DNA of 64,000 bases from IMGVR_UViG_3300026521_000471:124001-188000; one strand, 5' to 3'. Shown: positions 8,281-61,123, counted from the stretch's first letter. Made by a program: numbers and translations. The notes: generated from the letters alone by a model not told the origin.

Positions 8281-8634
8281 ATGTTTTATATTTTATACTC
8301 TAACAAAACAATAAATAAATCTCCTGAAATATCCTATGCTAATGGCACTACTCTACCCTTTAAGGAAGGATATTTTTTATTTGATGACAGCGATAAATCT
8401 ATAAATTTTTGGATTAATGAATCATCTAATTATATCGAATTTGAAGGTAACAGATTTAAAATTGATAAAAAATTAAAATTCAAAAATAAAAATCATGCTA
8501 CAATAATCCTTAATTCTTTAAAATTAGCCGAATTGAAAAAAAATGGTGGTGACTTCTTCTTCCCGAATACGTTTAAAAATATCAAAAATACCTTTGAACA
8601 ACTTATAAGTACCTACCCCGAATATTCCATTTAA
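8281..8634 (+). CDS. hypothetical protein (C-terminal YPEYSI)
   Basis: ORF with RBS and promoter. Confidence 0.6.
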   Translation: MFYILYSNKTINKSPEISYANGTTLPFKEGYFLFDDSDKSINFWINESSNYIEFEGNRFKIDKKLKFKNKNHATIILNSLKLAELKKNGGDFFFPNTFKNIKNTFEQLISTYPEYSI

Positions 8635-8674
8635 AAAATTGTAAAATAAGTATAATATATCACAAGGAGTAAAA

Positions 8675-10048
8675 GTGAGTGAAATTTTTAATGTACCAGA
8701 AATAATAGAAAATATAAGTGGTGAAAAAGTAAGTTCTTATCTTGAAGCAGAGCATAGAAGTTTTGCAATTTATACATTGCAGCAAAGAGCAATACCTTTC
8801 TTTAATGGGATGAAGCCCGTTCAACAAAGATGTCTTTGGCAATTAAGAGGAACTAGTAAATATGAAAAAGTCGCAAAACTAACCGGACAAGTTATGAGTA
8901 TTCACCCACACGGCGATGCTTCAATTGCAGATTCAATAAACCAAATGGCCGGACCATATTGTAACAATATTTCATTTTTTGATGGTCATGGTGCTTTTGG
9001 AACAAGAATTAATCCAACAGCATTTGGTAGTCCAAGATATGTATCAGCAAAATTTAGTTCATTTGCAAAAGAAGTGATCTTTAAAGATTGGGAAATTGTA
9101 GAATTACAACCAACATACGATGAAACTGATATGGAACCAACATTACTTTTGCCATTAATCCCACTTTTATTATTAAATGGTATTCAAGGTATTGCTACAG
9201 GTTATTCTACAACAATTTTACCTAGAGACCCTAAAGATGTAATTGATAGACAAATAAAAGTTTTAAAAGGACAAAAGATTGATAATCCTTTACCATACTC
9301 TAAACCTATTGATAACTGGGCTATCCGACATGAAGATAATCCTAACAAATATACATTCTTAGGTGAATGTGAGATCATTGATACGAGTAGTGCAAAAATC
9401 ACTAAATTGCCATTTGGTATGACTCATGCTAAGGTTGTTGAATCATTGGCGAAAATGGTTGATAAAGGGCAAATTGTTGATTATACAGACAAGTCTAAGA
9501 CTGATATTGATATTACAGTAAACTTTAAACGAGCAGCTCTCAAAAATAAAAGTGGGGAATTTGCTGCAAGAAAATTAAAACTTTCCGCAGGTATGACTGA
9601 AAGAATAATTGTCTTGGATTCAGAAGAATCTAAAGCAGTCGTAGAATATGATGATGCTGCACAATTTATTAAGGATTATACAGAATGGAGATTAAGTTTT
9701 TTTCCAAGACGATATGAACGATTTATACAATTAAATCTAGCAGAAATCAGTAGATTAAATGATATAGTTTTGGCAATCGATAATAATTTAGGTGGTCAAG
9801 CTAAAAATATTAAAAATAAAGCAGATTTAATTACATTTATTGAGGGTATTGGAGTTATCGATATAGAATATATCGCATCTTTACCAGTTTATAGATTTAC
9901 AGAAGAAGAATATGATAAAGCTAAAGCAAAAATTGCCGAATTAGAAAAACAAAATATGGAATATAATAACATTATTGATGATGTAGATCTCCAAAAAAAT
10001 ATTTTTATAAATGAACTAAAAGAAGTCAAAAAGAAATTTGCCAAATAA
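8675..10048 (+). CDS. type II DNA topoisomerase, GyrA/ParC-like subunit (T4 gp52-like)
   Basis: GMKPVQQR, HPHGDASI, SPRY active-site Tyr, NGIQGIATGY; no C-terminal pinwheel. Confidence 0.92.
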   Translation: MSEIFNVPEIIENISGEKVSSYLEAEHRSFAIYTLQQRAIPFFNGMKPVQQRCLWQLRGTSKYEKVAKLTGQVMSIHPHGDASIADSINQMAGPYCNNISFFDGHGAFGTRINPTAFGSPRYVSAKFSSFAKEVIFKDWEIVELQPTYDETDMEPTLLLPLIPLLLLNGIQGIATGYSTTILPRDPKDVIDRQIKVLKGQKIDNPLPYSKPIDNWAIRHEDNPNKYTFLGECEIIDTSSAKITKLPFGMTHAKVVESLAKMVDKGQIVDYTDKSKTDIDITVNFKRAALKNKSGEFAARKLKLSAGMTERIIVLDSEESKAVVEYDDAAQFIKDYTEWRLSFFPRRYERFIQLNLAEISRLNDIVLAIDNNLGGQAKNIKNKADLITFIEGIGVIDIEYIASLPVYRFTEEEYDKAKAKIAELEKQNMEYNNIIDDVDLQKNIFINELKEVKKKFAK

Positions 10049-10096
10049 TATTTATTAGTAGTAATAAATAAAGTAAAAATATCAGCAGGTTTATAA

Positions 10097-11284
10097 ATGG
10101 CAATTACACAGATAGCAGACTCAAATAATAATATAGGTACATTATATGAAGAGGTATTAAAACCTCTTTATGGTGATGATGCAGATAGAATTTTATCTAA
10201 TACAATATTAATCAGAAGTTTTTTTTTAAATATTATTAAAAAATTTGTTGATTCTGAAAATATGATTAATATTCGAGAATTTTCAACGGATCCTATTATG
10301 TATTACTTAACAAGTGGCGAGTACAACTATGATATTATTAAAGATTATATTACCGACTCAATAGTAATTCCCAATACTACTGATCTAAGTATGTTAAATA
10401 ATCAAATTAATAATTTGGAATATAAATTACCATTAGTAGTCGAAGCTCTATCATACAATAATGTTACTGAAGAATTATGGGATCAATATTTGGATGATAT
10501 TTTTTTATACTACGCTGATGATGCAAATAATCCAGTTCATAAAATTATAATTGAAGATGTCATATCGGTATTCAAGTTATGGAATGATACATCAAATACA
10601 AACCAAAAAGAAATGCTAAAAGCATACAATGCAAATAATAATATTTCGTATGATACTAATACTTTTTGGTTTGAACCATTTAATTCCATATCTAGTAAAT
10701 ATTGGGAAAAGTTTTCATTCGCTTTAACTATTAATGATTATGATATTTATGATTCTAATAATGATACGTATCTAGATATTATAGCGAATGAGTATTTCAC
10801 CAATGGATATTTTGATGAAATAATAATAAAAATAAACTACTACTATTGGTTTGATAATTTTCAAAAAATTACTGATTGGGTTGAAAAAAATCTAAAATCT
10901 GCTCTGGTTTCATATAGATTCAATACAATATTTTCAATTTCTAATAGATATGCAACTACTGAAGAAGCCGAAAAATATAATGACATCGTACGTCTAAATA
11001 CTGAAGATGAGGAATTAACTATGTATAAAGAACGATTACCAATACTCCTTGATACTATTCTTAAAAACCCTCAAACATATGGCTTTGAACTTATTGGTGG
11101 ATATTTTGGTAAAGAAGGATATAGTAATAATGCTGTTGATCAATCAATTTATGATAATGAGTTCAAAGATTATCTATGTGATATAGCTAATAGCTCACCA
11201 TTTAGCAGTTTAAATGATATGTATGTTAGAGTATTTAATGATCCAAATAAAAAAATTTTTATTTGTATTGATAATACCCCTTAA
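10097..11284 (+). CDS. acidic hypothetical protein, possibly structural
   Basis: 395-aa ORF after AATAAATA. Confidence 0.55.
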   Translation: MAITQIADSNNNIGTLYEEVLKPLYGDDADRILSNTILIRSFFLNIIKKFVDSENMINIREFSTDPIMYYLTSGEYNYDIIKDYITDSIVIPNTTDLSMLNNQINNLEYKLPLVVEALSYNNVTEELWDQYLDDIFLYYADDANNPVHKIIIEDVISVFKLWNDTSNTNQKEMLKAYNANNNISYDTNTFWFEPFNSISSKYWEKFSFALTINDYDIYDSNNDTYLDIIANEYFTNGYFDEIIIKINYYYWFDNFQKITDWVEKNLKSALVSYRFNTIFSISNRYATTEEAEKYNDIVRLNTEDEELTMYKERLPILLDTILKNPQTYGFELIGGYFGKEGYSNNAVDQSIYDNEFKDYLCDIANSSPFSSLNDMYVRVFNDPNKKIFICIDNTP

Positions 11285-11293
11285 AGGTAAATT

Positions 11294-11788: not shown

Positions 11789-12442
11789 ATGGTTAATAAG
11801 CTCACAATAGAAAATGCTTGGAAGCAAGATCCATTTAAATCATACTATGTTATACAAAATCCAAAAATCGATAAAAAGAAGCAAAAAATATCTGGACTAA
11901 GTATTAAATACGTTGAATATCGTGTTAAAGATTGGGATGATAAATTTGTACGTTTTGAAAAAGTAAATAAACTTAAAAATAAACGATTCGCAGATATTAT
12001 ATCATTCGATAAACGCTATCCTGATGCTGAAAATGAAGTATATGCTGAAAAAGTTTCAAAAGCAAAAACTAAACCGGATACTTATGTTTCGTATGGTATT
12101 TTTATCGACCCACAAATGGCTACGTATCACAAATTAATTAGATTACATAGACTGGCAGAAGATATGGCTGGCATATATAAAGCCTTAAAAAATAATGAAA
12201 TTAATAGTGTAGATAATGAAACTAATAACTCTTTAAAATCTAAAAAGAAAAAAACAGATACAAGTGATAAAGGTGAAGTTATATCTAAAGAAGCGGAAGA
12301 TGATATTAAGTCGGGAGTTAGTAATAAAGTGACGTTTAGCATAGATGAGGTTAAAAAATATTTTGAAGAAATCCAAAATACTGATTACTTTACTAAATTA
12401 GAGGATATTCAAATTGAAAATCCAGATTTAGCTACAAAATAA
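11789..12442 (+). CDS. hypothetical protein
   Basis: ORF after a sigma70-type promoter and AAGGA RBS. Confidence 0.65.
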   Translation: MVNKLTIENAWKQDPFKSYYVIQNPKIDKKKQKISGLSIKYVEYRVKDWDDKFVRFEKVNKLKNKRFADIISFDKRYPDAENEVYAEKVSKAKTKPDTYVSYGIFIDPQMATYHKLIRLHRLAEDMAGIYKALKNNEINSVDNETNNSLKSKKKKTDTSDKGEVISKEAEDDIKSGVSNKVTFSIDEVKKYFEEIQNTDYFTKLEDIQIENPDLATK

Positions 12443-12961: not shown

Positions 12962-14176
12962 ATGAGTCAATTAAATGCGAGTAAGTTTGAAAATAGTTCT
13001 CAATTAGAGAATCTGTATAAAGTAGCGTGTGATACAAGTGTATCTGTTATTGTTGAAGGTGATCATGGAATTGGTAAATCTGAAAGTGTTTATGCGTTTG
13101 CTAAGAAAAATAATTTTCATGTGGAACCCTTATTTCTATCACACCAAGAAGTTGCCGATTTAATTGGTATTCCAACACTTGAGAGAGATGAAAATGGACA
13201 GCCACTTACAACATGGTCAAAACCTATTTGGCTTCATAGAATGGAAGAAGCAGCTGCAAGAGGACAAAGAACCATTCTATTCTTAGATGAATTAAATAGA
13301 GCACAGACTGAAGTAAGACAGGCTGCTCTACAACTTGTACTTGATAAAATGATTCATGAGCATAAACTACCAGATACTGTTGTAAATGGAGTAGCTTTCC
13401 AAGCATTTGTTGTTGCGGCAGTTAATCCTGCAGATGGTTTCTATCAAGTTGATGAACTTGATCCAGCACTAATGGATAGATTTTTACATTTTAAACTTAC
13501 AGTAAACGCTGATAGTTGGTTAGATTGGGCTTCTGAAAACGGAGTACATAAAACTATTATCAGTTATATCGCTAATAGTAAAGATAAGTTATATGTGCGT
13601 GATGAAAATGCTGCAATCTTTCCAACACCAAGAAGTTGGACAAAGTTAAGTGAGCTTCTTCTTTCGTATGAAGATAAAAATATTGACAATCAAGCATTGA
13701 TGCATAATCTTATTACTGGTAAAATTGGATATACTGTCGGTGCACAATTTATGACATATTACAAAGAAAATTCTGTAATTGTTTCAGTTGAAGATATTGA
13801 AAAAATTACTAAAAAAGCATGGCCTTCTGCTGTTAAAAAATATGGTGATGCTACGGTTGAAGCATGTGATATGGTAGCTAAGAAAATATCAAAAGAGATT
13901 GATGAATTGGAAATTCCACTTCTAAAAGAGTTAAGTGCAAACTTAGTAGAAAAGTATCTTAATGATGAAGGTAAAGTTAAGTTTGAAGATGCAAGACCGT
14001 TAATTTGTTATCTACATGCACTACCAATTGAACAGCTAGCAGCAGTTATTAAAGAAATCCAAGTTGAGGATGAAGAAAATAATTCTAAAAGATATGATAA
14101 CCTTGCAGAAATTACACCTCAAAAAGAAATTTTTAGAAGAATTGTGAAAAGAGTTAAAAAACTTTCAATCGACTAA
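12962..14176 (+). CDS. MoxR-like AAA+ ATPase
   Basis: GDHGIGKS, LFLDELNRA, AVNP, LDPALMDRF, PTPRSW. Confidence 0.85.
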   Translation: MSQLNASKFENSSQLENLYKVACDTSVSVIVEGDHGIGKSESVYAFAKKNNFHVEPLFLSHQEVADLIGIPTLERDENGQPLTTWSKPIWLHRMEEAAARGQRTILFLDELNRAQTEVRQAALQLVLDKMIHEHKLPDTVVNGVAFQAFVVAAVNPADGFYQVDELDPALMDRFLHFKLTVNADSWLDWASENGVHKTIISYIANSKDKLYVRDENAAIFPTPRSWTKLSELLLSYEDKNIDNQALMHNLITGKIGYTVGAQFMTYYKENSVIVSVEDIEKITKKAWPSAVKKYGDATVEACDMVAKKISKEIDELEIPLLKELSANLVEKYLNDEGKVKFEDARPLICYLHALPIEQLAAVIKEIQVEDEENNSKRYDNLAEITPQKEIFRRIVKRVKKLSID

Positions 14177-17925: not shown

Positions 17926-18228
17926 TTATTCTTTTGAAAAAATTCGTTCTGCAAATTGAGTAACAGGTCCTCTAAGAACTTTTTGTAATTCTATACCAAA
18001 TAGATTTACTTCTTCATGTTCTTCTTTTGTAGCATTTAAAAGGGTGGTTAAACCATTAGTATATCTTGTAATATACTGATTATCAATCTGTCTATTTGAA
18101 CCTAATACAATAACTTTACAAGAAGAATCAATACGACTTAATACTAGTTGTAATGTAGAATTACTCATATTTTGAGCTTCATCAATAATTACAATAGCAT
18201 CTGAAAGTGTTCGACCTCTCATACTACC
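17926..18228 (-). pseudogene. orphaned duplicate of the phoH 3' end
   Basis: (GS)MRGRTLSDAIVIIDEAQN...IFSKE closely matches the last ~100 aa of 19010-20437; similarity stops at the Gly codon near 18228. Confidence 0.85.
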
Positions 18229-18279
18229 AAAACTTTTTAATAATTGTATAAATAATATAAAAGGATTAAGGACAAATTC

Positions 18280-19017
18280 ATGATATATACCATATATAAA
18301 ATCACAAATAAACTAAATAATAAAATATATATAGGAGCCCACACAACAGAGGACATTTCCGACAATTATATGGGTTCGGGAGCAATATTAAAAAAAGCTA
18401 TTGAAAAATATGGGTTAGATAATTTTTATAAAGAGGTGTTATATACGTTTACAACCGAAGAAGAAATGTATTTAAAAGAAGCAGAGTTAGTTAATGAAGA
18501 ATTTATTCAACGAGATGATACTTATAATTTAAAGGTCGGTGGATATGGAGGATGGTCTTATATTAACGAAAATAAATTAAATAATACAGAAAAAAATAGA
18601 TTATCAAGATTAAAAAATTTGGAAAAAGCAAATGAAGCAAATAAAAAATTAGTTGCTGAAGGGAAGCATAGAAAAGGCTTTAAGATTAGTGCGGAAACAA
18701 AATTGAAAATGTCGTTAAATAAGAATCGGTCATTTCCTGGCGAAAAAAACCCTCAATATGGGAAAAAATGCGTTAATAAAAATGGTAAAAATTTGATGAT
18801 ATTAAAAGAGGAAGTAAATGACTATATTAAAAAAGGTTGGGAGTTAGGTCAAATACAAAATAAACCAGATACCAAAGGAAATAAAAATGCGTCCTTTGGT
18901 AAAAGCTGGTACACAAATGGTGAAGAAAGTAAATTATTAAGCCAAGAAGAGTCAATTAAATACATTTCTTTAGGTTGGACAAAGGGTAGAACATTGAAAA
19001 AAAGTAAGACTAGCTAG
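18280..19017 (+). mobile_element. free-standing GIY-YIG (Seg-like) homing endonuclease
   Basis: TIYKITN..KIYIGAH, YMGSG, YNLKVGG; NUMOD-like C-terminal repeats; own TATAAATA promoter at 18247. Confidence 0.85.
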
Positions 19018-19024
19018 TCTTACT
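19003..19024. repeat. perfect 22-bp palindrome carrying the stop codons of both convergent genes
   Basis: AGTAAGACTAGCTAGTCTTACT; both proteins end S-K-T-S-stop. Confidence 0.9.
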
Positions 19025-20437
19025 AAAAATTTTTTCCGCAAATGTTGTTATAGGTCCTCTTAATACTTTCTGTAATTCTATACCGAATAAACTTACTTCT
19101 TCATGTTCTTCTTTTGTAGCATTTAAAAGTGCAGTCAAACCATTCGTATATTTGGTAATATATTGATTATCGATTTGTCTATTTGAACCCAATACAACAA
19201 CTTTACAAGAAGAATCAACCCTAGTCAATGTTAGTTGTAGTGTACTAGTACTCATATTTTGAGCTTCATCAATAATTACAATAGCATTAGATAAAGTTCT
19301 TCCGCGAAGTGCACCAGTCCACATAGTTTCAACTTGATAACGTTCTACTAACTCTTGGACTTTTTCAGATATTCGTTCTTCAGTTACAGTTTCTCCCTTA
19401 CCAGGCTTATTTTCTTTTGATTTTTTTAACATTTGACCCGCAATATAAGCAAGAGTATCAAATAATGGGAAATTATATATCTCAAATTTTGCTTCATTCG
19501 TTGAAAGATAACCTACATCTTCTCCTTTAGCTAACGATTCAACTGAGTTTCTAATATAGACTATACGTTGATATTCTTTACACTTAATCAATTCCATTGC
19601 TGCACTAATAGCTAAAAGGGTTTTACCAGAACCAGCTTTAGCTTCAGCTACAACGATATTATAATGATTATTAAGTAATGCATTACTAAAAAATAATTGT
19701 TCGGCATTCATAGGATTTACATTTTGTTTACGTAATTCTTTTTCATCTAAAAATTGTATTTTATTATTAATTATATAAGCAAGTATTTTTTGCCCGTCTT
19801 TATTAAAAATATAATTAAAATTATTTGGTTTGTGTTCGGAGTTAAAATCTAAAATATTATCTCCCTCTCGAACTTCCTGTCCATTTAAATTAATTTCTTT
19901 AATAAAATCTAAAGAAATCTCTTTATTTCCTAAATTTAATGGTTCTGTCTCCAGTCCTAAACTTATAGCTCTTGTTCTAGCCATCACATCTAATGATATA
20001 AATTTAATATGTTCATAATTTATATCCTCTGTATTATGTATTAAATCCAATGTAATTTCTAAGATCTTTCTATCATTTCTTATACTATTACTCGTATTAT
20101 CAGAATCAGCTTTATATACTTCCTTGGATATAATATGAATAACAGTATCATCTACTTTAGTTTCGATTAAAACTATATCAAATGATTTATTGTTGTCGCT
20201 ATTTGCTTTTATAACTCTTTTATCTTTAATTTCCGCATCAAATAACATTCTACCGAACTCTCTGGCTTGGAAATTTATTTCATCCCAACCACTTTTTTTA
20301 CTATCTATTTCATCTAATACTGTTTCTGGTAAAATAATAAGATTTTTACCATTATCCGATAAAGTGAATAGATTTTTTGCGTCGTCAAGTATTATATTTG
20401 TATCTAAACAAAATACTTTTTCAAATTTTTTAGTCAT
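19010..20437 (-). CDS. phoH: PIN-PhoH ATPase
   Basis: N-terminal PIN (LDTNIILD, VLDEID, NDRKIL); AKAGSGKT; RGRTL; IIDEAQN. Confidence 0.9.
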   Translation of the reverse strand: MTKKFEKVFCLDTNIILDDAKNLFTLSDNGKNLIILPETVLDEIDSKKSGWDEINFQAREFGRMLFDAEIKDKRVIKANSDNNKSFDIVLIETKVDDTVIHIISKEVYKADSDNTSNSIRNDRKILEITLDLIHNTEDINYEHIKFISLDVMARTRAISLGLETEPLNLGNKEISLDFIKEINLNGQEVREGDNILDFNSEHKPNNFNYIFNKDGQKILAYIINNKIQFLDEKELRKQNVNPMNAEQLFFSNALLNNHYNIVVAEAKAGSGKTLLAISAAMELIKCKEYQRIVYIRNSVESLAKGEDVGYLSTNEAKFEIYNFPLFDTLAYIAGQMLKKSKENKPGKGETVTEERISEKVQELVERYQVETMWTGALRGRTLSNAIVIIDEAQNMSTSTLQLTLTRVDSSCKVVVLGSNRQIDNQYITKYTNGLTALLNATKEEHEEVSLFGIELQKVLRGPITTFAEKIFSKTS

Positions 20438-26787: not shown

Positions 26788-27312
26788 ATGCTAGTTATTA
26801 AAGCTATACAATTTGCAGCAGAAAAACATAAAGGTCAAGAACGAAGATGTTCTGGATTACCCTATGTAACACATCCAATTATTGTATCTCAACTAATTGC
26901 AAAATATAAAAATGGCTCTAAAAAGCTAGATGAATTACAATGTGCTGGATTACTCCATGATGTTTTAGAAGATACAGATTGTACATATTCTGAGTTAGAG
27001 CGGGAATTTGGTCCATTAGTAGCTTCAATAGTCGTTGAATTAACGTCAGATCCTGTAGCAATTAAGCAGCTAGGTAAGAATGAATATTTAAAGCAAAAAA
27101 TGATTAAAATGTCTAAATATGCTTTTATCATAAAATTAATAGATCGACTTTCAAATGTTTTAGACAAACCTGGAGAGTCATATGTTAAAAAGACGTTAAA
27201 TATGATGGAATTTCTTAAAAAAAATCGTCCTGATATAACTGAACGGCAATTAAGAATTATAAATGAGATAGAAAATGTGTGTCTGGAGTTTCAAAAAAAT
27301 GAGTGTAAGTAA
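26788..27312 (+). CDS. HD-domain (p)ppGpp hydrolase-like protein (small alarmone hydrolase/Mesh1 type)
   Basis: AAEKHKGQER, PYVTHP, LLHDVLEDT, IKLIDRLSN; no synthetase domain. Confidence 0.85.
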   Translation: MLVIKAIQFAAEKHKGQERRCSGLPYVTHPIIVSQLIAKYKNGSKKLDELQCAGLLHDVLEDTDCTYSELEREFGPLVASIVVELTSDPVAIKQLGKNEYLKQKMIKMSKYAFIIKLIDRLSNVLDKPGESYVKKTLNMMEFLKKNRPDITERQLRIINEIENVCLEFQKNECK

Positions 27313-27817
27313 ATTTGAATATCAACTATTAGAAGATGAATTGAAAAAAACTAAACGTGAGTTAAACCAATTAAAAAATATGCAAGAATTTGAATATCTA
27401 GTAGGTCAAGAATTTAAAATGCCTATGAAATTTGGTTTTGATATTACAGAGTCAAATATTAAATCACTAAAAAGTGATTTAGGATTCATTTTATGGGCAC
27501 TTATAAAAAATAACCATTTAACTCCAGAAGATTTTGATGATGAAGTAATGTCAGCTGTTGAAAAAATAAATCAAATACGTCCAAAAAATTACGTAGAATT
27601 TAAAGCAGCAATATCGTTTAGTAGATTACGTCAATCTAATAAATATGGTAGTACCTATATTGAAGAATTTCAAACACAAATTTTAAATGATGTTTATTGG
27701 TTAGGAATCTGGTTTTATATTAAAAATCCACAAGAATTTTTATTTGAATATAATAATAAAATTATGCAATTAAACACTAAAAATTTTTCATTTGTAAACC
27801 CCCAATTATTTGTTTAA
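27275..27817 (+). CDS. hypothetical protein (C-terminal NPQLFV; start probably 27299)
   Basis: ORF; GGAG RBS precedes ATG at 27299. Confidence 0.55.
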   Translation: MCVWSFKKMSVSKFEYQLLEDELKKTKRELNQLKNMQEFEYLVGQEFKMPMKFGFDITESNIKSLKSDLGFILWALIKNNHLTPEDFDDEVMSAVEKINQIRPKNYVEFKAAISFSRLRQSNKYGSTYIEEFQTQILNDVYWLGIWFYIKNPQEFLFEYNNKIMQLNTKNFSFVNPQLFV

Positions 27818-34863: not shown

Positions 34864-35418
34864 CTAAAATATAAATATTTCTTTAATTTCTGGCATTAAC
34901 TCAGCAATATCACTACTAACAATCTCAGTCAAATTCTTATCTACATAATTAATAAACTCGTTAATAAGTATTTTTGACTCCTTAATCATTTTATTTACTT
35001 GTTCTTCTTCAGGTTTATCCTCTATACCTTCAAATAAATAAAGGGCTGAAGTATCCAATTTATTATATATGGCATTCATAATTTGGTTATTTGTTTTTGA
35101 ACCTATTTTAGAACCAAACATTAATGAACCTTTCAAATATCGTTCTCCAGGCGATCTAAAAGCAGACCCCATCCTAGTAACTGATATACCAAATTTAAAA
35201 TATATTTGTAATGGATTCTTATCTGGAAATGCTGAAAACTCATAAATTATATCTAATGTATCATTCCAACCTGTTCTAAGTTCTATTGCTTCGATACTAA
35301 TACCATAATCTTTAAAAGAATTATCTATTTGAACTAAAAATTCATCTTTTGATTTTTTTAAATAAAAATATTGTATATCCTTACTGGGAAACATACCCAA
35401 ATTATTGATAAATTCCAT
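34864..35418 (-). CDS. hypothetical protein
   Basis: Coupled ORF. Confidence 0.6.
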   Translation of the reverse strand: MEFINNLGMFPSKDIQYFYLKKSKDEFLVQIDNSFKDYGISIEAIELRTGWNDTLDIIYEFSAFPDKNPLQIYFKFGISVTRMGSAFRSPGERYLKGSLMFGSKIGSKTNNQIMNAIYNKLDTSALYLFEGIEDKPEEEQVNKMIKESKILINEFINYVDKNLTEIVSSDIAELMPEIKEIFIF

Positions 35419-38831: not shown

Positions 38832-39034
38832 TGATAACTGAAATTATAAGATTTAACTGTCATGTATTAAAGGTAAATAAATATAACAAAATAACTCCTG
38901 ATGAATTGTTATTAGAATATAAAACTCGTAACAACCTTATTTTAGAAAATACGGAAGTATATGTTGAAAGCTGTAAATGGGCTGCTGGAAGTACTAGTAC
39001 TATTATAACAAAAGTGAAAAGGATAGAAAAATGA
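38831..39034 (+). CDS. small hypothetical protein
   Basis: Coupled ORF. Confidence 0.5.
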   Translation: MITEIIRFNCHVLKVNKYNKITPDELLLEYKTRNNLILENTEVYVESCKWAAGSTSTIITKVKRIEK

Positions 39035-42842: not shown

Positions 42843-42844
42843 AA

Positions 42845-43729
42845 ATGCTATTAACATTTGGAGGATATGGTGGTGAATATTGCTGTGGTGAACTCAGTAA
42901 GCTTCATATTAACAATATAAAAGAACTACTTAGACGTTTTGAATACGAAGATATTATTGGACATTTCGATACAATTTTTAGTAGTAGTGGATGGGAAAGA
43001 CAATATTATGATTTTGATGATATTGAACATATTTCTAGCTGTGCCATTGATGGTAGTATTTCTATTAATCCTAATGAACGCGAACATACAAAGTATGATT
43101 CTATTAATATTAGTGATTTAACTATCAATATCAATGATGATGACTTTTTATCTGATGGTTGGTATATTTCATCAGCTTCCATAGAAAAAGGTATTTTTTT
43201 TGAAGCAGAAATTTTAGATGATGTCAATGAATTTAATAAAGATTTACTGATCATAGATGCAAAAGATACAGATTATATTGGTACTGGAGACATTTTAGTT
43301 ACTGATGTTTTTTACAATAATAAAGTCCTCGAAATGAACTATGATGTTATGGATACATTCGGTAAAGGTTTCTATCAAAGTATTTTTCATGTTAAAGATA
43401 GGATACATTATGACGGAAAGGAAAAACTCCTAGACGATTTTAAAAACTCTTTTAATATTATTGAAATGGTTGGTATGGATCGTGAAGATATAATCTTTGA
43501 ATATTTAGAATATGTAGAAGCTGCAAATAATAAGCATTTAATAAAAGATGATCGAATTATAGTTTGGGCTAGTCCATTCTTATATGAACATTTTGAAAAA
43601 GAAGATGTAGACCTTTTATGGATGACTGAAAAGAATATTAAATTCGCATTGAAAAATGGTTTAAAAGATGAAATACCACCAAATATTTTTGAACGTATTA
43701 TTATGAGGTTTCCAGAATGGCTAATTTAG
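42845..43729 (+). CDS. acidic hypothetical protein (C-terminal FPEWLI)
   Basis: ORF. Confidence 0.6.
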   Translation: MLLTFGGYGGEYCCGELSKLHINNIKELLRRFEYEDIIGHFDTIFSSSGWERQYYDFDDIEHISSCAIDGSISINPNEREHTKYDSINISDLTININDDDFLSDGWYISSASIEKGIFFEAEILDDVNEFNKDLLIIDAKDTDYIGTGDILVTDVFYNNKVLEMNYDVMDTFGKGFYQSIFHVKDRIHYDGKEKLLDDFKNSFNIIEMVGMDREDIIFEYLEYVEAANNKHLIKDDRIIVWASPFLYEHFEKEDVDLLWMTEKNIKFALKNGLKDEIPPNIFERIIMRFPEWLI

Positions 43730-44007
43730 TATATGGTATTACCATTGATAGAAAATTATTTCATGGCAAAATTATAAAATCCAGTTTGAAATCTATGATT
43801 TCTATTAAGACAGTTGATAATAGAATTTTAAATTTTCCTAAGTCTCATAAATTATTTAAAACAAAAGAAGAACGAGATATAGAAATTTTTTTAAATAATA
43901 ATAATTTAAGCATAGATAAAGTTGCAGAGTTATATAATATTAACAAAAAAGAGGCAATTTTAGCTTACCAATCAGCTATTAAAAAATTTCCCGAAAAATT
44001 TATATAA
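43717..44007 (+). CDS. hypothetical protein (C-terminal FPEKFI)
   Basis: Coupled ORF. Confidence 0.6.
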   Translation: MANLVYGITIDRKLFHGKIIKSSLKSMISIKTVDNRILNFPKSHKLFKTKEERDIEIFLNNNNLSIDKVAELYNINKKEAILAYQSAIKKFPEKFI

Positions 44008-44016
44008 AGGATCATT

Positions 44017-44610: not shown

Positions 44611-44619
44611 AGGATTTTT

Positions 44620-49965: not shown

Positions 49966-50919
49966 ATGGAAAAAATAGAAACACTAACCGATATGGTAGA
50001 AGTAATCAGAGAAATAAAAACACCGACAAGTCAAAAAGCTAATATGGTTGTAGGAAATATTAGAGCACAAATTAAAAATTACGTACAACGTAATAATCTT
50101 AAATCACTTGTAGTAGGTGTGAGTGGGGGTCTTGATTCAGCTGTTGTAGCGGCTCTTTGTCAAGAAGAATTTACAGGAGTACCTCTAATTGGTCTTTCTA
50201 TTCCTATGAGTTCAACTAACGCTCACAAAGAACAGGCAGAATGGGTAGGTAATACCTTTTGTACGGCTTTTGAAGAATTCAACTATTGGGATGAAACTTT
50301 TCAGTACAATGAAGAAGAAGGTACTGATATGATGAGTGAAGTATTTAATACCGTTTCAGCAACAGATAAAGTTGCTGAAAAAGCAGGATTTAAAACGGAA
50401 GATTTTCCAAAAAATGTTCTTCAAGGTAATATTAAAGCGAGGCTTAGAATGATAACTCTTTATGACCTTGCAAGAAAAACAAACGGTATGGTTCTTTCAA
50501 CAGATAACCTTTCTGAATTTCAAATGGGATTTTGGACTATTTGTGGTGATGTAGGTGATTTTGGACCTATCCAAAATGTTGGTAAGGGGTTTGAGCTTCC
50601 AGCCATAGCAAGAGCTCTTGGAATAAGAGCAGATATTATCACTCAATCGCCTAGTGATGGACTAATGGTAACTGAAGAAAATACAGATGAGGCTCAACTT
50701 GGAGCTAATTATGAGGAAGTTGATACTATTATGAGTATTTATCTTGGCAATATCAATAAACCAAAAGAAATTATAGATAAACTTAAAAGTAACCTATTTA
50801 ATATTATTAATGATAAAAAGAGTGCTAAGAAAATTTCAAATGTAATTACACGTTATGAAAATTCACACTTTAAACGTAATGGTACAATCAACCTTACAAG
50901 AGAACAGATCGGAATCTAA
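49966..50919 (+). CDS. nadE: NH3-dependent NAD synthetase
   Basis: GVSGGLDS, GNIKARLRM, STDNLSE, GD, PSDGL, TDEAQLG, HFKR. Confidence 0.9.
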   Translation: MEKIETLTDMVEVIREIKTPTSQKANMVVGNIRAQIKNYVQRNNLKSLVVGVSGGLDSAVVAALCQEEFTGVPLIGLSIPMSSTNAHKEQAEWVGNTFCTAFEEFNYWDETFQYNEEEGTDMMSEVFNTVSATDKVAEKAGFKTEDFPKNVLQGNIKARLRMITLYDLARKTNGMVLSTDNLSEFQMGFWTICGDVGDFGPIQNVGKGFELPAIARALGIRADIITQSPSDGLMVTEENTDEAQLGANYEEVDTIMSIYLGNINKPKEIIDKLKSNLFNIINDKKSAKKISNVITRYENSHFKRNGTINLTREQIGI

Positions 50920-50944
50920 ATTCCGATCAAAAAAAAGGATATTT

Positions 50945-51289
50945 ATGGTTTACCGTTCTAAAGCTGATTTAGAGGAAATTAGAAAGTCACAAAATAATAT
51001 TAAATTATATGCTGTATATTCACATCTTGCATTACCCGTATTTAAAATCAAATCATTAAGTAAAAAATATGTATATTGGGAAGATAATTCAAAACATCCA
51101 TATCCTAGTAATTCAGCAGGTTATATATTAACAGACAATTTATATGAAGGTTGGAAAATATATAAAGATACTTATAATAAACGGAAAAAATTTATTGAAG
51201 ACCAATATAAATCAGAAATACAAAAATTAACAATGGCAGAATCTATACTAGATTCTCTTTCAAAATCAAATCCAGAACTTTTTATCTGA
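50945..51289 (+). CDS. hypothetical protein (C-terminal NPELFI)
   Basis: AAGGA RBS before ATG at 50945; the track start at 50855 overlaps nadE. Confidence 0.6.
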   Translation: MVYRSKADLEEIRKSQNNIKLYAVYSHLALPVFKIKSLSKKYVYWEDNSKHPYPSNSAGYILTDNLYEGWKIYKDTYNKRKKFIEDQYKSEIQKLTMAESILDSLSKSNPELFI

Positions 51290-51865: not shown

Positions 51866-53005
51866 ATGAAAAAAAGTATGAGAGAAGAATCTTTAGGAAC
51901 TAGACTTAAAGGTTATGAAAGAGAGTTTGAATCAGTAATCGATCCAAAGGATTTTATTATTTGTAGAATTGATGGACATAAATTTAGCAAATATACAAAA
52001 GGTATGAAAAAACCATTTGATAAAATGTTGTCAAATACAATGGAGGAAACTACTAAAGACCTTGTTGAAAAATTTGGAGCCGTAACGGGCTATACGCAAT
52101 CTGATGAAATTTCATTGGTTTTTGTCCCTCAATTCAAAGAAAGATTAATACCTATTGAAACCAAAGAATTATTTGTTCTTAATGATGAAGAAGCAACCTA
52201 TAAAGTTTATGACAAAGAATACAACTTGCTAGGTTCATTAGATATTAGTTATGAAGATATGGATGATGAATATTTCAGTATTAACTTTTGGGTAGTTTCT
52301 GATACTAATGATGAAATTATCGATCAATGTTCTTGGCAAAATAGAAACTCTAAAACTGAGGCTAAAGCATTAGAAACGCTTTTAAAGTATATCATTAAGA
52401 AAGTTGAAATAACAAATGAGCAAATTTTTGGAGGAAGAGTTCAGAAATTAACTTCTTTGATTGCGGCATATACTACTATGCAGTTTAATAAACACTTTTC
52501 TAAATTTTTAGAAAAAACATACGAAGATTATGAAGAAAAATTAGAAAAGGGCGAAATCGATACGAATAGTTTAGAGGCCATGAAATACCTTAAAACAATG
52601 GATGAAAAAGTAGGTAATGCTTGGTTTGATGCTAGAGTTTATGGCGTATCATCTAAAGAAGAAGCATTTAACAGTATTATGTGGCGAATTCGTGATGCCG
52701 AGAAGAACTCTAGATCAATGTTTGCACAGACATACTGCTCTCATAAATCGCTATTAGGAAAAAATGGTCTTGAACAGGTTGAATACTGTAAAGAAACTAC
52801 TGGTAAAGATTGGGAAGAAGTTGAAGATAAATACAAATATGGCATTTTAGTTAAAAAAGAAAAATATCTTAAACCTATTTCTGAAGGGACTATGGATTAT
52901 GCTCAAAATGATTTTGTAGAAAGATCCAGAATTATTAGTTGGGCTGAAAAAATTACTACTTTCTCTGGTGAAAAAGTTGAAATGGTTGTTAGGAAATATA
53001 AATGA
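51866..53005 (+). CDS. Thg1-like 3'-5' nucleotidyltransferase with internal insertion
   Basis: CRIDGHKFSKYT, KPFD, GYTQSDEISL, FGGRVQKL, FDAR, WRIRDAEKNS. Confidence 0.88.
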   Translation: MKKSMREESLGTRLKGYEREFESVIDPKDFIICRIDGHKFSKYTKGMKKPFDKMLSNTMEETTKDLVEKFGAVTGYTQSDEISLVFVPQFKERLIPIETKELFVLNDEEATYKVYDKEYNLLGSLDISYEDMDDEYFSINFWVVSDTNDEIIDQCSWQNRNSKTEAKALETLLKYIIKKVEITNEQIFGGRVQKLTSLIAAYTTMQFNKHFSKFLEKTYEDYEEKLEKGEIDTNSLEAMKYLKTMDEKVGNAWFDARVYGVSSKEEAFNSIMWRIRDAEKNSRSMFAQTYCSHKSLLGKNGLEQVEYCKETTGKDWEEVEDKYKYGILVKKEKYLKPISEGTMDYAQNDFVERSRIISWAEKITTFSGEKVEMVVRKYK

Positions 53006-57288: not shown

Positions 57289-57290
57289 TC

Positions 57291-57458
57291 ATGAAATACG
57301 GTTTTAGTTTATTTGAATTAATTATTGTAGTTGTAATATTGGGAATTCTAGCAGCAGTTGCTATTCCTAGATTATCAAATTCTTCATCAAATAATGATAA
57401 AATTTCATACAAAAAAATAATTTTTACTAATGGTGATGGTGGATCCGCCGAGAATTGA
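57291..57458 (+). CDS. mini prepilin-like peptide (55 aa, not in ORF track)
   Basis: MKYG/FSLFELIIVVVILGILAAVAIPRL class III signal (G-1, F+1, E+5); GAGG RBS. Confidence 0.75.
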   Translation: MKYGFSLFELIIVVVILGILAAVAIPRLSNSSSNNDKISYKKIIFTNGDGGSAEN

Positions 57459-57818
57459 ACTCGGGTCTGCCACTACTTCCATTTAAATCTCATTTACAAG
57501 TTTAGTTTGATTTTTAATACTTTAATACTTAGATAACCAAACAAATCGGTATTAAAGGCACTTGATATAATTTTCGTCTAAAGGTATCAAGTTTAACTTT
57601 AGCTTATCTATTTTTTATTATACACTCTGTATTTATTAGTAAATAGACAACTAATAAACTGAGTGATTCCGGGCTCCCAGAGGGAGGATTAAGCAGCTAC
57701 TCTCGCAGTCTGTGGAATATAAAGTTTTGTGTTTGCATTTAAGCTTTTTTGATGATTAAGTCATCACTCTACTTGCAATTTAAATTTCTTATAGCAACAT
57801 CGATCCCAATTCGGACCC
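57437..57818 (-). ncRNA. ssrA: tmRNA
   Basis: 5' GGGTCCG pairs with 3' CGGATCC-ACCA with a G3-U wobble; T-arm CCGAG-TTCAATT-CTCGG; tag ORF ANTKLYIPQTARVAA* at 57736-57689. Confidence 0.93.
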
Positions 57819-57825
57819 ATAAAAA

Positions 57826-59636: not shown

Positions 59637-59638
59637 TA

Positions 59639-59660
59639 TTAGATAGGGAAACCTATCTAA
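59639..59660. terminator. hairpin between convergent genes
   Basis: TTAGATAGG-GAAA-CCTATCTAA. Confidence 0.7.
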
Positions 59661-60487
59661 TCAATGGGTGACAAATCAACTAATTCTTGATTTCCTTCTT
59701 CATCAATTTCAATCTCAAATTCTCTACCTTCTAAATTTTCTTTAGCATACTCATCACTATAATAATAGTCCCACGAAGTTTGTAAAGAGTTTTGTAATGT
59801 ATCATAATGTTCTTCTAAAAGATTATTAACTTCTTCAACATAAAGCTCTATTTCATTTTCTATTTGACTTTCTATTTCAGCTCGTATTTCAGAAGTTAAA
59901 TCATAAAATTCATTCAAATCCATATTATAAACATCTTGAAAAAACATTTTTGATGCTTTAATGCCATCTTTAATACTATTCAATGAGTCTTTATATTCCG
60001 GTTCATAACCTAATTCATTTAACCATTTTTCAATTGACTGTTCAACTTCAAAAACTATTTCGATTTGTTCTCCATCCTCTAATGGATCTAAAAAAATCCT
60101 TGATTCGATTTCACTATCTATAACATCAGTATCGATATAATAATCTTCAGTTTCTAATTCATAATTTTGAAAACTATATGGAAGATCATAAACAAATGAT
60201 TCTTTTTCAAATTCATCCAAACGAGATGACTTAATTTCTTTAATAGATTTATGACCATCATCGATTGTACCTCTATATTCTAATTCATTTCTATAAAGGT
60301 CGAATGTAAAACTATCTTCATCTATATCTATCCCAAATTCAGTTTTCATAGTATTGACAAAATCATCAAAAATCCACTCATACCAATCTTCAGGAACTAA
60401 AAATTCATCTTCCTGAAAATTAACAATTATTTCTTCTTTTAATTTTTGAGGTAAATCCTCAAATTTTACAATTTCAGTTTTAAACAT
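59657..60487 (-). CDS. late acidic hypothetical protein
   Basis: TATAAATA at 60517 on the minus strand; GGAG RBS. Confidence 0.65.
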   Translation of the reverse strand: MFKTEIVKFEDLPQKLKEEIIVNFQEDEFLVPEDWYEWIFDDFVNTMKTEFGIDIDEDSFTFDLYRNELEYRGTIDDGHKSIKEIKSSRLDEFEKESFVYDLPYSFQNYELETEDYYIDTDVIDSEIESRIFLDPLEDGEQIEIVFEVEQSIEKWLNELGYEPEYKDSLNSIKDGIKASKMFFQDVYNMDLNEFYDLTSEIRAEIESQIENEIELYVEEVNNLLEEHYDTLQNSLQTSWDYYYSDEYAKENLEGREFEIEIDEEGNQELVDLSPID

Positions 60488-60532
60488 AATATCTCCAATT
60501 AAGTTTTTATTATGTTTATTTATACCTTATTT

Positions 60533-60808
60533 CTAATCATTACGGATGATACCAAATATTTCATCCATTTCAATAATTAATAATTTTTCTTTATCTAATT
60601 CAATTTCAGTACCAGAAAATTTTCCAAAAACAACTGTCGTACCAATATCTACACCGAAATCTTCTTTAGTATCATCGTTACATGCTACAATTTTTCCAAA
60701 AGATGGAGTTTCTTTTGATGAATCAGGTATAATAATACCACTTGCTGTTGTTTTCTGAGCTTCCTCTACTTTTACCGCTACTCTAGTTCCTAATGGTTCA
60801 AAATTCAT
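60533..60808 (-). CDS. groES: co-chaperonin GroES
   Basis: FEPLGTRV, TTASGIIIPDSSKE, VVFGKFSGTEI. Confidence 0.92.
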   Translation of the reverse strand: MNFEPLGTRVAVKVEEAQKTTASGIIIPDSSKETPSFGKIVACNDDTKEDFGVDIGTTVVFGKFSGTEIELDKEKLLIIEMDEIFGIIRND

Positions 60809-60832
60809 TTTAATTCCTTATTTTTTATTTTA

Positions 60833-61123
60833 TTATACAAATTTTTCAGGGTATTTTTCTAACATTTTAGTAAACATTTTATGAAGATCATTAATATTTA
60901 CTTTAAACTGCTCTTCTATAACCTTATTAATACTTAATATAGTTTTTAACATGGCTTCATCTTCTGATTTTTCTAATAAATGTTTAGATTTTCTTTTTGT
61001 ATTTCCTCGACCAACATCAATAATACAAAACTTATTTGTAATCCTTAAAATTTTTCCAGTAGAAATTTTTCCAGACCACTCATCTTGATACCAAACTTGC
61101 ATACCTATTTCAAAATCTTTCAT
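60833..61123 (-). CDS. small SH3-like hypothetical protein (C-terminal YPEKFV)
   Basis: FEIGMQVW..GKILRI beta-barrel pattern. Confidence 0.55.
   Translation of the reverse strand: MKDFEIGMQVWYQDEWSGKISTGKILRITNKFCIIDVGRGNTKRKSKHLLEKSEDEAMLKTILSINKVIEEQFKVNINDLHKMFTKMLEKYPEKFV

What the first reader, a model, noticed from the sequence alone, without database searches (positions are those of the whole stretch)
8281..61123. Recurrent C-terminal tag [YFN]-P-[EQ]-x-[FLS]-[IV]-stop on six unrelated proteins
Seen with identical spacing to the stop: YPEYSI (8634), NPQLFV (27817), FPEWLI (43729), FPEKFI (44007), NPELFI (51289) and YPEKFV (60833-), mostly after a short amphipathic helix. Looser variants occur at 12442 (NPDLATK) and 34864 (MPEIKEIFIF). 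The proteins differ in size and sequence, and the DNA is not repeated, so the conservation is at the peptide level. Inference: a common docking or sorting signal for one hub, such as a chaperone/AAA ATPase, protease, polymerase or membrane scaffold. I do not recognise it as a described motif.
Basis: partly seen in the sequence, partly recalled or inferred. Interest (0 to 1): 0.7.

Follow-up and report, generated by a model that had tools for sequence, protein, structure and literature searches.

The report
Shared C-terminal tail on phage proteins
About a tenth of this large phage's proteins, otherwise unrelated in sequence, end in the same six residues ([Y/F]-P-E-x-[F/L]-I-stop), and the same ending recurs in other phages including a cultured Vibrio phage, which points to an undescribed docking tail read by one common partner.

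Summary
All six C-termini are as described. Genome-wide (224 kb uncultivated phage), 40 ORFs end in P-[E/Q/D]-x-x-[I/V/L/F]-stop. The core motif sits at the exact C-terminus 33 times against 0.04 expected. Synonymous codons and stop codons vary, so the constraint is on the peptide. Without the tail, no two of the 40 proteins match by BLASTP, and they share no Pfam or PHROG family. Orthologues at 47-82% identity keep the tail.

The same tail marks 22% of ORFs in cultured Vibrio phage phiKT1024, 28% in a complete 103-kb metagenomic phage, and many ORFs in other records. The last residue depends on the lineage (I, L or F), and orthologues switch with their genome, which argues for one co-evolving partner.

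The best hub candidate, by inference only, is the phage's MoxR AAA+ ATPase plus zincin-vWA (DUF2201) pair. Tail-gene arrays lie directly downstream of the DUF2201 gene in several divergent phages. A conserved gene directly downstream of MoxR also carries the tail. The one complex prediction gave no verdict. The main rival is a hyper-divergent multigene family with a structural C-terminal cap. I found no description of the motif in the literature searched.

The parts
8281..8634 (+). 117-aa ORF ending ...LISTYPEYSI-stop; it lies directly upstream of the topoisomerase II gene (8675-10048)
   Evidence: no Pfam or PHROG family
27275..27817 (+). 180-aa ORF ending ...FVNPQLFV-stop (the Gln variant of the tail)
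   Evidence: Its orthologue in the 496-kb relative L018 (E=1e-49) ends NPQLYI
42845..43729 (+). 294-aa ORF ending ...MRFPEWLI-stop, lying between the Hen1 (41589-42842) and Pnkp (44620-47310) RNA-repair genes
   Evidence: Six metagenomic orthologues at 47-82% identity all end R[FY]PEW[LF]I. Synonymous changes occur inside the tail codons. Gene context
43717..44007 (+). 96-aa ORF ending ...IKKFPEKFI-stop. The AF2 model shows an SH3/Tudor-like barrel, three helices, and a one-turn helix formed by PEKF
   Evidence: Orthologues in L001-L003 all end [FY]PEKFI while the four residues before the tail vary. Model pLDDT 81. Foldseek gave only weak Tudor/KapB matches
50855..51289 (+). ORF ending ...SKSNPELFI-stop (144 aa from the first ATG; called from window 50945, 114 aa, on a near-identical contig)
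60833..61123 (-). 96-aa ORF ending ...LEKYPEKFV-stop. The N-terminus weakly resembles the phage ProQ-C/Tudor-like domain
   Evidence: Pfam PF24203 at E=0.08; atlas lead at 0.84-0.85, a lead only
12962..14176 (+). MoxR-type AAA+ ATPase (Pfam AAA_5). Together with the zincin-vWA DUF2201 protein (genome 36814-38268, outside the window) it is the candidate hub. It is one of only five G000 proteins with BLASTP matches in both tail-rich phages phiKT1024 and G015
   Evidence: The hub role is inference only
11789..12442 (+). ORF ending NPDLATK: not a member (wrong spacing, ends in K)
34864..35418 (-). ORF ending MPEIKEIFIF: a longer, different ending (orthologue ends DFPEISELFFI); not counted as a member

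Best explanation
The hexapeptide [Y/F/H/N]-P-E-x-[F/L]-[I] at the free C-terminus, usually after an amphipathic helix, is a short linear docking or sorting tail. Many sequence-unrelated, mostly small (60-130 aa) non-structural phage proteins carry it, and one common partner that co-evolves with it reads it.

The most likely partner is phage-encoded: the MoxR-type AAA+ ATPase together with its zincin-metallopeptidase/vWA co-factor (DUF2201). In this model the invariant Glu could complete the vWA MIDAS metal site, and the terminal hydrophobic pair could fill a pocket. The tailed proteins would then be delivered for remodelling, processing or timed removal, or would act as adaptors.

Shown: the motif, its position, peptide-level selection, the diversity of carriers, its spread across phages, the lineage-specific terminal residue, and the gene neighbourhood. 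Inferred: that the tail binds anything, the identity of the partner, and the role of the Glu.
For: 1. Enrichment only at the exact C-terminus: 33 observed against 0.04 expected, and 0-1 at other offsets.

2. Peptide-level selection. Synonymous codons and stop codons vary among carriers. Orthologues at 47-82% identity keep the tail unchanged while adjacent residues change.

3. The carriers are diverse. No BLASTP pair appears among the 40 once tails are removed, and no Pfam or PHROG family is shared. The 234 tailed ORFs from 8 genomes fall into 197 phmmer clusters, 174 of them singletons. Carrier sizes run from 59 to 379 aa across these genomes. One has a DnaJ-type zinc finger and one an SH3/Tudor-like barrel plus helices.

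4. The motif is widespread at different GC contents. It ends 40/399 ORFs here (28% GC), 79/355 in cultured Vibrio phage phiKT1024 (35% GC), 50/180 in the complete 103-kb G015 (39% GC), 23/73 in G010 and 16/119 in G008. The reversed-pattern control gave 0 or 1 matches per record.

5. The terminal residue changes in concert. It is I in G000, G015 and phiKT1024 (79-96%). It is L in G014 and G016, and L or V in G009. It is F in G023 (seven F-ending, no I-ending). Three orthologous groups follow their genome's preference.

6. Link to MoxR/DUF2201.
- The genes directly downstream of DUF2201 are tail ORFs in G000 (5 of 5), L018 (5), L019 (3), phiKT1024 (5 of 5), G015 (4 of 5), G010, G009 and G031.
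- The chance that the next three genes are all tailed is 0.029, 0.086 and 0.135 in G000, phiKT1024 and G015.
- An orthologous 215-379-aa tailed protein lies directly downstream of MoxR in phiKT1024 and G010; its G003 homologue (weakest match, E=4e-4), also directly downstream of MoxR, ends YAEYFI.
- DUF2201 and MoxR are two of only five G000 proteins that match both phiKT1024 and G015.
- Both large tail-rich records found by motif alone carry DUF2201.
- The DUF2201 HExxH and DxSxS (MIDAS) motifs are invariant.
Against: - No binding evidence exists. The DUF2201 + Mg + 96-aa protein prediction gave no verdict (0.17 against a mark of 0.32).
- Most relatives were found through DUF2201, so co-occurrence is biased by how they were sampled.
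- DUF2201/MoxR also occur in phages with no or few tails (G002, G004, G020, G024, Alteromonas AD45-P1, PBS1).
- Tail-rich lineages are scattered on the DUF2201 tree (9 changes, the same as shuffled labels).
- In this genome no tail gene lies within five genes of MoxR, and G003 and G001 have none within five genes of DUF2201.
- Both AF2 models place the tail as a short helical turn after a long helix, which also fits an intramolecular cap.
- In phiKT1024 and G015 a longer strand-helix-tail module recurs, hinting at common descent for many carriers.
- 'Helix-[YF]PE-L' is a generic helix junction in unrelated solved proteins.
Confidence: 0.5

Rival explanations
1. The carriers form one very old, hyper-divergent multigene family of small phage proteins, expanded by tandem duplication. 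Only the C-terminal structural element is still recognisable. In this reading the tail is an intramolecular cap (Tyr/Phe and the last two hydrophobic residues packing back on the final helix) and not a docking signal.
For: - Most carriers are 60-130 aa and lie in same-strand tandem arrays.
- Neighbouring genes sometimes share more than the tail, for example genome 4322 and 4660, and small phmmer clusters exist.
- phiKT1024 and G015 show a recurrent strand - acidic helix - tail module about 25 aa long.
- Both AF2 models have N-terminal strands, C-terminal helices and a one-turn terminal helix.
- Within an orthologous group even the 'x' positions are fixed, such as PEWLI and PEKFI.
Against: - No similarity is detectable outside the tail for 174 of 234 proteins or for any pair in this genome.
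- The tail also sits on proteins of 180-379 aa and on a DnaJ-type zinc-finger protein.
- A cap would not need to stop exactly three residues after PE in every protein.
- A cap would not be expected to switch its last residue in concert (I, L or F) across different orthologous groups of one genome.
Confidence: 0.28
2. The tail is a C-terminal degron or docking peptide read by a host machine. Candidates are a Clp, Lon, FtsH or HslUV-type protease, or another universal hub. It would give timed turnover of early phage proteins, or bring host targets to the protease.
For: - The motif lies strictly at the C-terminus with a hydrophobic end, as in known C-terminal degrons and protease-docking tails (general knowledge).
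- Carriers lie in non-structural regions and none lies in genome 188-224 kb.
- Lineage-specific last residues could track different hosts.
Against: - The tail occurs in phages of clearly different hosts and GC contents with nearly the same consensus.
- It does not resemble the phage's own tmRNA tag, which ends ...ARVAA.
- This reading does not explain the neighbourhood with MoxR/DUF2201.
- Nothing here tests stability.
Confidence: 0.12
3. The motif is a nucleotide-level signal (ribosome-binding site, promoter, terminator or recombination site) that overlaps gene ends and only appears as a peptide motif.
For: GAG is strongly preferred (10 of 12) when the next gene's ATG overlaps the stop, consistent with an embedded Shine-Dalgarno-like element about 8 nt upstream.
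Against: - All synonymous codons for P, Y/F, E and I, and all three stops, are used, close to genome-wide usage.
- 24 of 26 non-overlapping cases use GAA, and many have no start codon nearby.
- The same peptide appears in genomes of 28-44% GC.
- The reversed-pattern control gave 0 or 1 matches per record.
Confidence: 0.02

Closest known systems
C-terminal docking tails of AAA+/protease systems (HbYX tails of proteasomal ATPases; HslU C-terminal tail inserting into HslV)
   Same: A short motif at the extreme, free C-terminus with a hydrophobic or aromatic end, which would insert into a pocket of a partner machine. From general knowledge, not tested here.
   Different: Those tails sit on the ATPase itself, not on dozens of unrelated client proteins. 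Their sequence (Hb-Y-X, or ...FIL) differs from [YF]PEx[FL]I. No proteasome- or HslV-type partner was identified here; only PDZ, gp45 and a few other families were searched in the genome.
Shared C-terminal hub-binding peptides (SSB C-terminal tip D-D-D-I-P-F; clamp-binding tails of T4 gp43/gp33/gp55; bacterial beta-clamp motif QL[SD]LF)
   Same: Short terminal peptides containing Pro, an acidic residue and a terminal aromatic or aliphatic residue, which let different proteins use one hub.
   Different: The sequence and spacing differ. No gp45-type clamp was detected in this genome, although that search was uninformative. The carriers are mostly tiny proteins of unknown function, not replication enzymes. 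The one PolB-like carrier is probably a chance or truncation case.
C-terminal degrons (ssrA tag ...LAA, MuA-type ClpX signals)
   Same: A C-terminal position, a non-polar end, and portability between unrelated proteins.
   Different: The consensus is different, and the phage's own tmRNA tag ends ARVAA. Genetically encoded degrons on 10-28% of a proteome are not known. Stability was not tested.
MoxR AAA+ / vWA co-chaperone systems (RavA-ViaA, CbbQ-CbbO, and the phage MoxR + zincin-vWA pair described for group 2.2 jumbo phages in PMC7824862)
   Same: This genome and all larger tail-rich relatives encode the MoxR + zincin-vWA pair, with intact HExxH and MIDAS motifs. vWA MIDAS sites classically bind an acidic residue of the client, and the tail has an invariant Glu.
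   Different: No client-recognition motif is described for the phage pair. PMC7824862 proposes a role in virion assembly and processing of structural proteins, whereas the tailed proteins here lie in non-structural regions. The link rests on synteny only.
ORF6N / HTH-type DNA-binding domains in which the recognition helix is followed by [RK]-F-P-E-x-F
   Same: The last roughly 30 residues of window 43717-44007 and 60833-61123 look like helix-turn-helix + [FY]PEKF[IV]. An HTH-repeat protein (P0010) matched the tail profile through ...SHPEYF[IV]W.
   Different: Only 1 of 40 carriers touches Pfam ORF6N, at E=0.067. In those domains the chain continues into a strand or wing, whereas here it stops. 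The resemblance to ORF6N is partly from memory and is a lead only.

Membership tests
Single paralogous protein family (full-length paralogues) | Detectable sequence similarity outside the shared motif | tested here: not met
   BLASTP all-vs-all of the 40 proteins without their last 8 aa gave no pair at E<1e-3. phmmer on 234 tailed ORFs of 8 genomes without their last 7 aa gave 197 clusters, 174 of them singletons.
Single paralogous protein family (full-length paralogues) | A common Pfam or PHROG family, or a common fold | tested here: inconclusive
   No family is matched by more than one member. Only two AF2 models were made; both show N-terminal strands plus C-terminal helices, one at low confidence.
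Short linear C-terminal docking motif | Positional enrichment at the free C-terminus, independent of protein family | tested here: met
   33 at the exact end against 0.04 expected, and 0-1 at offsets 1-11. The motif occurs on unrelated proteins.
Short linear C-terminal docking motif | Purifying selection on the peptide in orthologues while flanks drift | tested here: met
Short linear C-terminal docking motif | Co-variation with a partner (concerted change across carriers within a lineage) | tested here: met
   The terminal residue is I, L or F by lineage, and three orthologous groups follow their genome. A founder effect is not fully excluded.
Short linear C-terminal docking motif | Demonstrated binding to a partner | not testable with these tools
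   The one complex prediction (DUF2201 + Mg + 96-aa carrier) gave no verdict. Biochemistry is needed.
Clients of the MoxR / zincin-vWA (DUF2201) module | Co-occurrence and conserved gene neighbourhood with the module | tested here: inconclusive
   Arrays lie directly downstream of DUF2201 in G000, L018, L019, phiKT1024, G015, G010 and G031, and a tailed orthologue lies directly downstream of MoxR. However, sampling was biased towards DUF2201, the module also exists in tail-poor phages, and tail-rich lineages are scattered on the DUF2201 tree.
Sliding-clamp (gp45/beta) binding tails | Presence of a clamp, and the motif on replication proteins | tested here: inconclusive
   Pfam gp45 families were not found, but the control genomes were silent too. 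The only polymerase-like carrier has an orthologue in which the chain continues past FPEY.
PDZ-ligand type C-terminal peptide with a phage PDZ protein | A PDZ domain encoded by the phage | tested here: not met
   PF13180 was not found in the genome, while all 14 control genomes matched. Host PDZ proteins were not tested.
ORF6N-type HTH domain | A significant match to PF10543 | tested here: not met
   1 of 40 members matched, E=0.067, below the curated cut-off.

The most novel reading that the evidence does not exclude
A proteome-scale, genetically encoded C-terminal address tag in phages. Between 10% and 30% of a phage's proteins, of unrelated sequence, would be routed by the hexapeptide [YF]PEx[FL][I/L/F]-COOH to one phage-encoded AAA+ machine, the MoxR ATPase plus zincin-vWA protein. 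That machine would remodel, cleave or time-limit them, or use them as interchangeable adaptors that bring host targets to it. This would be a phage counterpart of F-box or degron systems, and would give the widespread but enigmatic phage MoxR/vWA ('CobS/CobT-like') pair a client code.
Probability: 0.22. Interest if true: 0.92.

Novelty: categorically new. Interest (0 to 1): 0.82.

Why it matters
Small early phage proteins are the largest pool of genes of unknown function, and they usually offer no handle for study. Here dozens per genome share one transferable six-residue ending. That ending is under clear selection, occurs in several phage lineages, and changes its last residue in concert within a lineage.

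If it is a docking tail, a single pull-down would define a hub and give a functional class to hundreds of orphan proteins. It could also explain what the common phage MoxR / zincin-vWA pair does, and it would provide a small portable tag for phage biology. Because cultured Vibrio phages (phiKT1024, phiTY18, Pv27, Va1) carry it on about a fifth of their genes, the question can be tested directly.

Tried and rejected
- **DNA-level explanation.** Rejected because of synonymous variation. Only the GAG preference before overlapping starts is a nucleotide effect.
- **tmRNA link.** The phage encodes SmpB and a tmRNA, but the tag (ANTKLYIPQTARVAA) is unrelated to the tail.
- **Sliding clamp, PDZ, phage-nucleus or T4-like ideas.** Pfam searches of the genome found no gp45, PDZ, RNAP beta or Gp23. 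The gp45 and Gp23 searches were uninformative because the controls were silent.
- **PolB-like carrier as evidence for a replication hub.** Its G001 orthologue continues ...FPEYVVWDYKYNARLDS, so this member is probably a chance or truncation case.
- **Profile of the tails against 1.84 billion representative proteins.** Only three repeat proteins were returned, which was not useful. Against PDB sequences it found only generic helix-[YF]PEL junctions.
- **Close relatives.** Searching IMG/VR with the topoisomerase and the phage collection with window DNA or the 294-aa protein found no close relative. The topoisomerase's best phage-collection matches are about 34% identical.
- **Foldseek of the 96-aa model.** Only weak Tudor/KapB-like hits.
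- **Complex prediction (DUF2201 + Mg + 96-aa carrier).** No verdict, score 0.17; this is not evidence either way.
- **DUF2201 tree.** Tail-rich lineages are not one clade.
- **Phylogenetic profiling for a hub.** Only five G000 proteins match both phiKT1024 and G015: DUF2201, MoxR, PIN-PhoH with its 3' fragment, and the RNR small subunit. This is too few, and too biased by sampling, to be decisive.
- **Literature.** No hit for the motif strings. The phiTY18 paper does not mention the motif.

Full report
**What the window is.** The window is bases 124001-188000 of a single 224,467-bp IMG/VR virus record. The record is linear, 85% complete by CheckV, and 28% GC. It has no close relative among deposited phages: its topoisomerase II is at most about 34% identical to any. 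The window encodes:
- topoisomerase II, a DnaB-like helicase, an RNA ligase-like protein and a MoxR-type ATPase;
- a Hen1-Pnkp RNA-repair pair and SmpB, plus a tmRNA;
- PIN-PhoH and the RNR small subunit.

**The observation.** Taking the whole genome, 40 ORFs end in P-[E/Q/D]-x-x-[I/V/L/F]-stop. Anchored at the C-terminus, the consensus is hydrophobic-hydrophobic-[K/E/N/D]-x-[Y/F]-P-E-x-[F/L/I/Y]-I. Counts among the 40 are P 40, E 38, Y/F 31 and I 32, and hydrophobic positions further upstream are spaced as in an amphipathic helix.

The core [YFHN]PE..[IVL] occurs 33 times at the exact end of 399 ORFs, against 0.04 expected. No set of 2000 shuffles exceeded 2. Shifting the register by 1-11 residues gives 0 or 1. 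Tailed genes are mostly 60-130 aa and often form same-strand tandem arrays (genome 8.4-10.0, 12.1-13.2, 18.4-19.4, 38.3-39.7, 50.4-51.7 and 62.6-63.2 kb). None lies in the last 36 kb of the record.

**Peptide level, not DNA level.** Every synonymous codon for Pro, Glu, Tyr/Phe and Ile, and all three stops, are used, at frequencies close to the genome's. There is one nucleotide effect. When the next gene's ATG overlaps the stop (…ATGA), Glu is GAG in 10 of 12 cases, against 2 of 26 otherwise. I interpret this as a Shine-Dalgarno-like GAG 8 nt before the start. It cannot account for the motif.

Among orthologues, the tail codons differ synonymously (CCA/CCT/CCC, CTA/CTG, TTT/TTC/TAC, ATA/ATT) while the peptide stays the same.

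**Are the carriers related?** With the last 8 residues removed, no pair of the 40 proteins reaches E<1e-3 by BLASTP. No Pfam or PHROG family is hit by more than one of them, even at E≤10 for Pfam. Single hits are:
- a DnaJ-type CXXCXGXG zinc finger in a 94-aa carrier;
- a PolB palm in a 283-aa carrier.

The PolB case is probably spurious. Its orthologue in a 306-kb relative reads ...DIFPEYVVWDYKYNARLDS, so FPEY is internal there.

AF2 models of two carriers show N-terminal strands, C-terminal helices and a one-turn terminal helix made by the tail.
- The 96-aa window protein (pLDDT 81) is an SH3/Tudor-like barrel plus three helices.
- The 118-aa protein is confident only in its C-terminal helices.

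So a shared architecture for some small carriers is possible. Tails also sit on proteins of 180, 294 and, in other phages, 215-379 aa.

**Conservation.** Six metagenomic orthologues of the 294-aa protein (47-82% identity) all end R[FY]PEW[LF]I. Orthologues of the 96-aa protein all end [FY]PEKFI although the preceding four residues vary. Seven further carriers have orthologues in other phages, and those orthologues keep a tail.

**Spread beyond this genome.** Relatives were found through the DUF2201 protein that precedes one array. Two of them also carry arrays:
- a 496-kb NCBI contig (L018, 75% identity) has 9 tailed ORFs in 21 kb;
- a JGI contig (L019) has 6.

I then counted the DNA pattern for [YF]PExxI-stop in whole records, using the reversed pattern as control; the control gave 0 or 1 matches per record.

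| Record | Strict pattern hits | Tailed ORFs / all ORFs |
|---|---|---|
| This genome (G000) | 23 | 40/399 |
| G015, 103.5 kb, complete with terminal repeats | 40 | 50/180 |
| Cultured Vibrio phage phiKT1024 (OM249648.1, 191 kb) | 30 | 79/355 |
| G008 | 10 | 16/119 |
| G010 | 9 | 23/73 |
| G003 | 7 | 12/347 |
| G005 | 6 | not counted |
| G001 | 4 | 7/391 |
| Alteromonas AD45-P1, PBS1, RaK2, G002, G004 | 0 or 1 | not counted |

These genomes range from 28% to 44% GC, so composition is not the cause. In phiKT1024 these genes are annotated CDS, all 'hypothetical protein'.

Scanning IMG/VR for YPELFI-stop and YPEYFI-stop, independently of any marker gene, found further tail-rich records: G027, G029, G030, G031, G037, G041, G043 and G045.

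Pooling 234 tailed ORFs from 8 genomes and removing the last 7 residues gives 197 phmmer clusters, 174 of them singletons.

**Concerted change of the last residue.** Within a phage the last residue is nearly uniform, but it differs between lineages.
- I is used by G000 (79%), G015 (96%) and phiKT1024 (86%).
- L is used in G014 (six L-ending, no I-ending) and G016. G009 uses L or V.
- F is used in G023 (seven F-ending, no I-ending).

Three orthologous groups that span these lineages follow the genome they sit in:
- group A ends …QL, ML or IL in the L-type phages and …FI in the I-type phages;
- group B ends WPEY[AF]L against YPEYFI;
- group C ends …IMF in the F-type phage, …LLL in G009 and …HLI in G008.

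Unrelated proteins changing the same position together is what a shared, co-evolving reader predicts. It is hard to derive from an intramolecular cap. A founder effect in lineage-specific expansions explains uniformity, but not the switches within orthologous groups.

**Which partner?** Only five G000 proteins have BLASTP matches in both phiKT1024 and G015:
- the DUF2201 protein, a zincin-like metallopeptidase fused to a vWA domain, with HExxH and the DxSxS MIDAS motif invariant in 11 homologues;
- the MoxR AAA_5 ATPase (window 12962-14176);
- PIN-PhoH and its duplicated fragment;
- the RNR small subunit.

The genes directly downstream of DUF2201 are tail ORFs in G000 (5 of 5), L018 (5), L019 (3), phiKT1024 (5 of 5), G015 (4 of 5), G010 (2), G009 (1) and G031 (at least 4). 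The chance that a gene is followed by three tailed genes is 0.029, 0.086 and 0.135 in G000, phiKT1024 and G015.

Orthologous group C (215-379 aa, tailed) lies directly downstream of MoxR in phiKT1024 and G010. Its G003 homologue (weakest match, E=4e-4) is also directly downstream of MoxR and ends YAEYFI. The two large records found by motif alone both carry DUF2201.

Iyer et al. (PMC7824862) describe this MoxR + zincin-vWA pair in jumbo phages as a chaperone/co-chaperone with an unknown clientele. vWA MIDAS sites bind an acidic residue of their ligand (general knowledge), and the tail's invariant Glu would suit this. That step is inference.

Against this hub:
- most relatives were found via DUF2201, so the sample is biased;
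- the pair also exists in tail-poor phages;
- tail-rich lineages are scattered on the DUF2201 tree;
- in this genome no tail gene lies within five genes of MoxR, and G003 and G001 have none within five genes of DUF2201;
- the single complex prediction gave no verdict.

**Verdict.** The motif is real, strongly non-random, under peptide-level selection, and present on sequence-unrelated proteins. It is shared by several phage lineages, including cultured Vibrio phages. It is absent from Pfam and PHROG matches and from the literature I could search.

I rate 'a common docking or sorting tail read by one co-evolving partner' at about 0.5. Within that reading, the MoxR/zincin-vWA module is the leading candidate, at about 0.2-0.25 overall. 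The main rival is a hyper-divergent gene family whose tail is a structural cap (about 0.28). A host-read degron is at about 0.12, and a DNA-level signal is essentially excluded.

Noticed in passing
window 57437-57818 (-) and 39031-39480 (+): The phage encodes its own tmRNA (tag ANTKLYIPQTARVAA) and an SmpB homologue, which together form a trans-translation pair. The tag is unrelated to the tail motif.
   Followed up: partly
window 41589-47310: A Hen1 (417 aa) - 294 aa - 96 aa - 197 aa - Pnkp (896 aa; kinase/phosphatase/ligase) RNA-repair cassette. Two tailed proteins lie between Hen1 and Pnkp, and the order is conserved in relatives at 47-82% identity (L001-L003). A Thg1-like gene lies at 51866-53005.
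   Followed up: partly
window 17926-20437: A PIN-PhoH gene (19010-20437, -) and a 98-aa duplicate of its 3' end (17926-18222, -) flank a GIY-YIG (SegE-like) homing endonuclease ORF (18280-19017, +). This looks like a footprint of homing-endonuclease insertion.
   Followed up: partly
window 21054-22463 (-): A superfamily-2 helicase (ResIII/Helicase_C) has a weak intein-splicing-domain match at residues 47-96 (E=2e-7, below the curated cut-off).
   Followed up: no
window 2668-5322; genome 97868-103519 and 112040-113350: At least six paralogues of about 440-530 aa match phrog_10773 (unknown function). This is a second, separate multigene family in the genome.
   Followed up: no
genome 64573-65424 (L007:4573-5424): A 283-aa stand-alone PolB palm fragment with motifs B and C and no thumb is the only DNA_pol_B match in the record. 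The polymerase may be split or highly divergent, or the rest may lie in the missing 15% of the genome.
   Followed up: partly
genome 67.7-83.8 kb (L007, L008): There are 22 tRNA genes, 17 of them within 2.6 kb (genome 81.2-83.8 kb) and 5 more at 67.8-72.4 kb.
   Followed up: no
L018:3979-5978 and L019:9150-9350: An array of 60-72-aa ORFs has the same [H/R]PE[I/L][V/Y]LKY element followed by about 12 more residues. This is an internal, extended version of the tail that may show what the motif looks like when the chain continues.
   Followed up: no
downstream of genome 4989, 29219 and window 8634: A recurrent AAAA(T)TGTAAAAT sequence, followed by a TATAAT-like box, lies just after several tailed genes. 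It may be a phage promoter.
   Followed up: no
genome 32306-33604 and about 43.7-44.7 kb: The phage encodes an M16-family peptidase and an Alp7A/ParM-like actin. Relatives (L018, L019, L020) have them close to the DUF2201 gene. Both are alternative hub candidates that I did not test.
   Followed up: no
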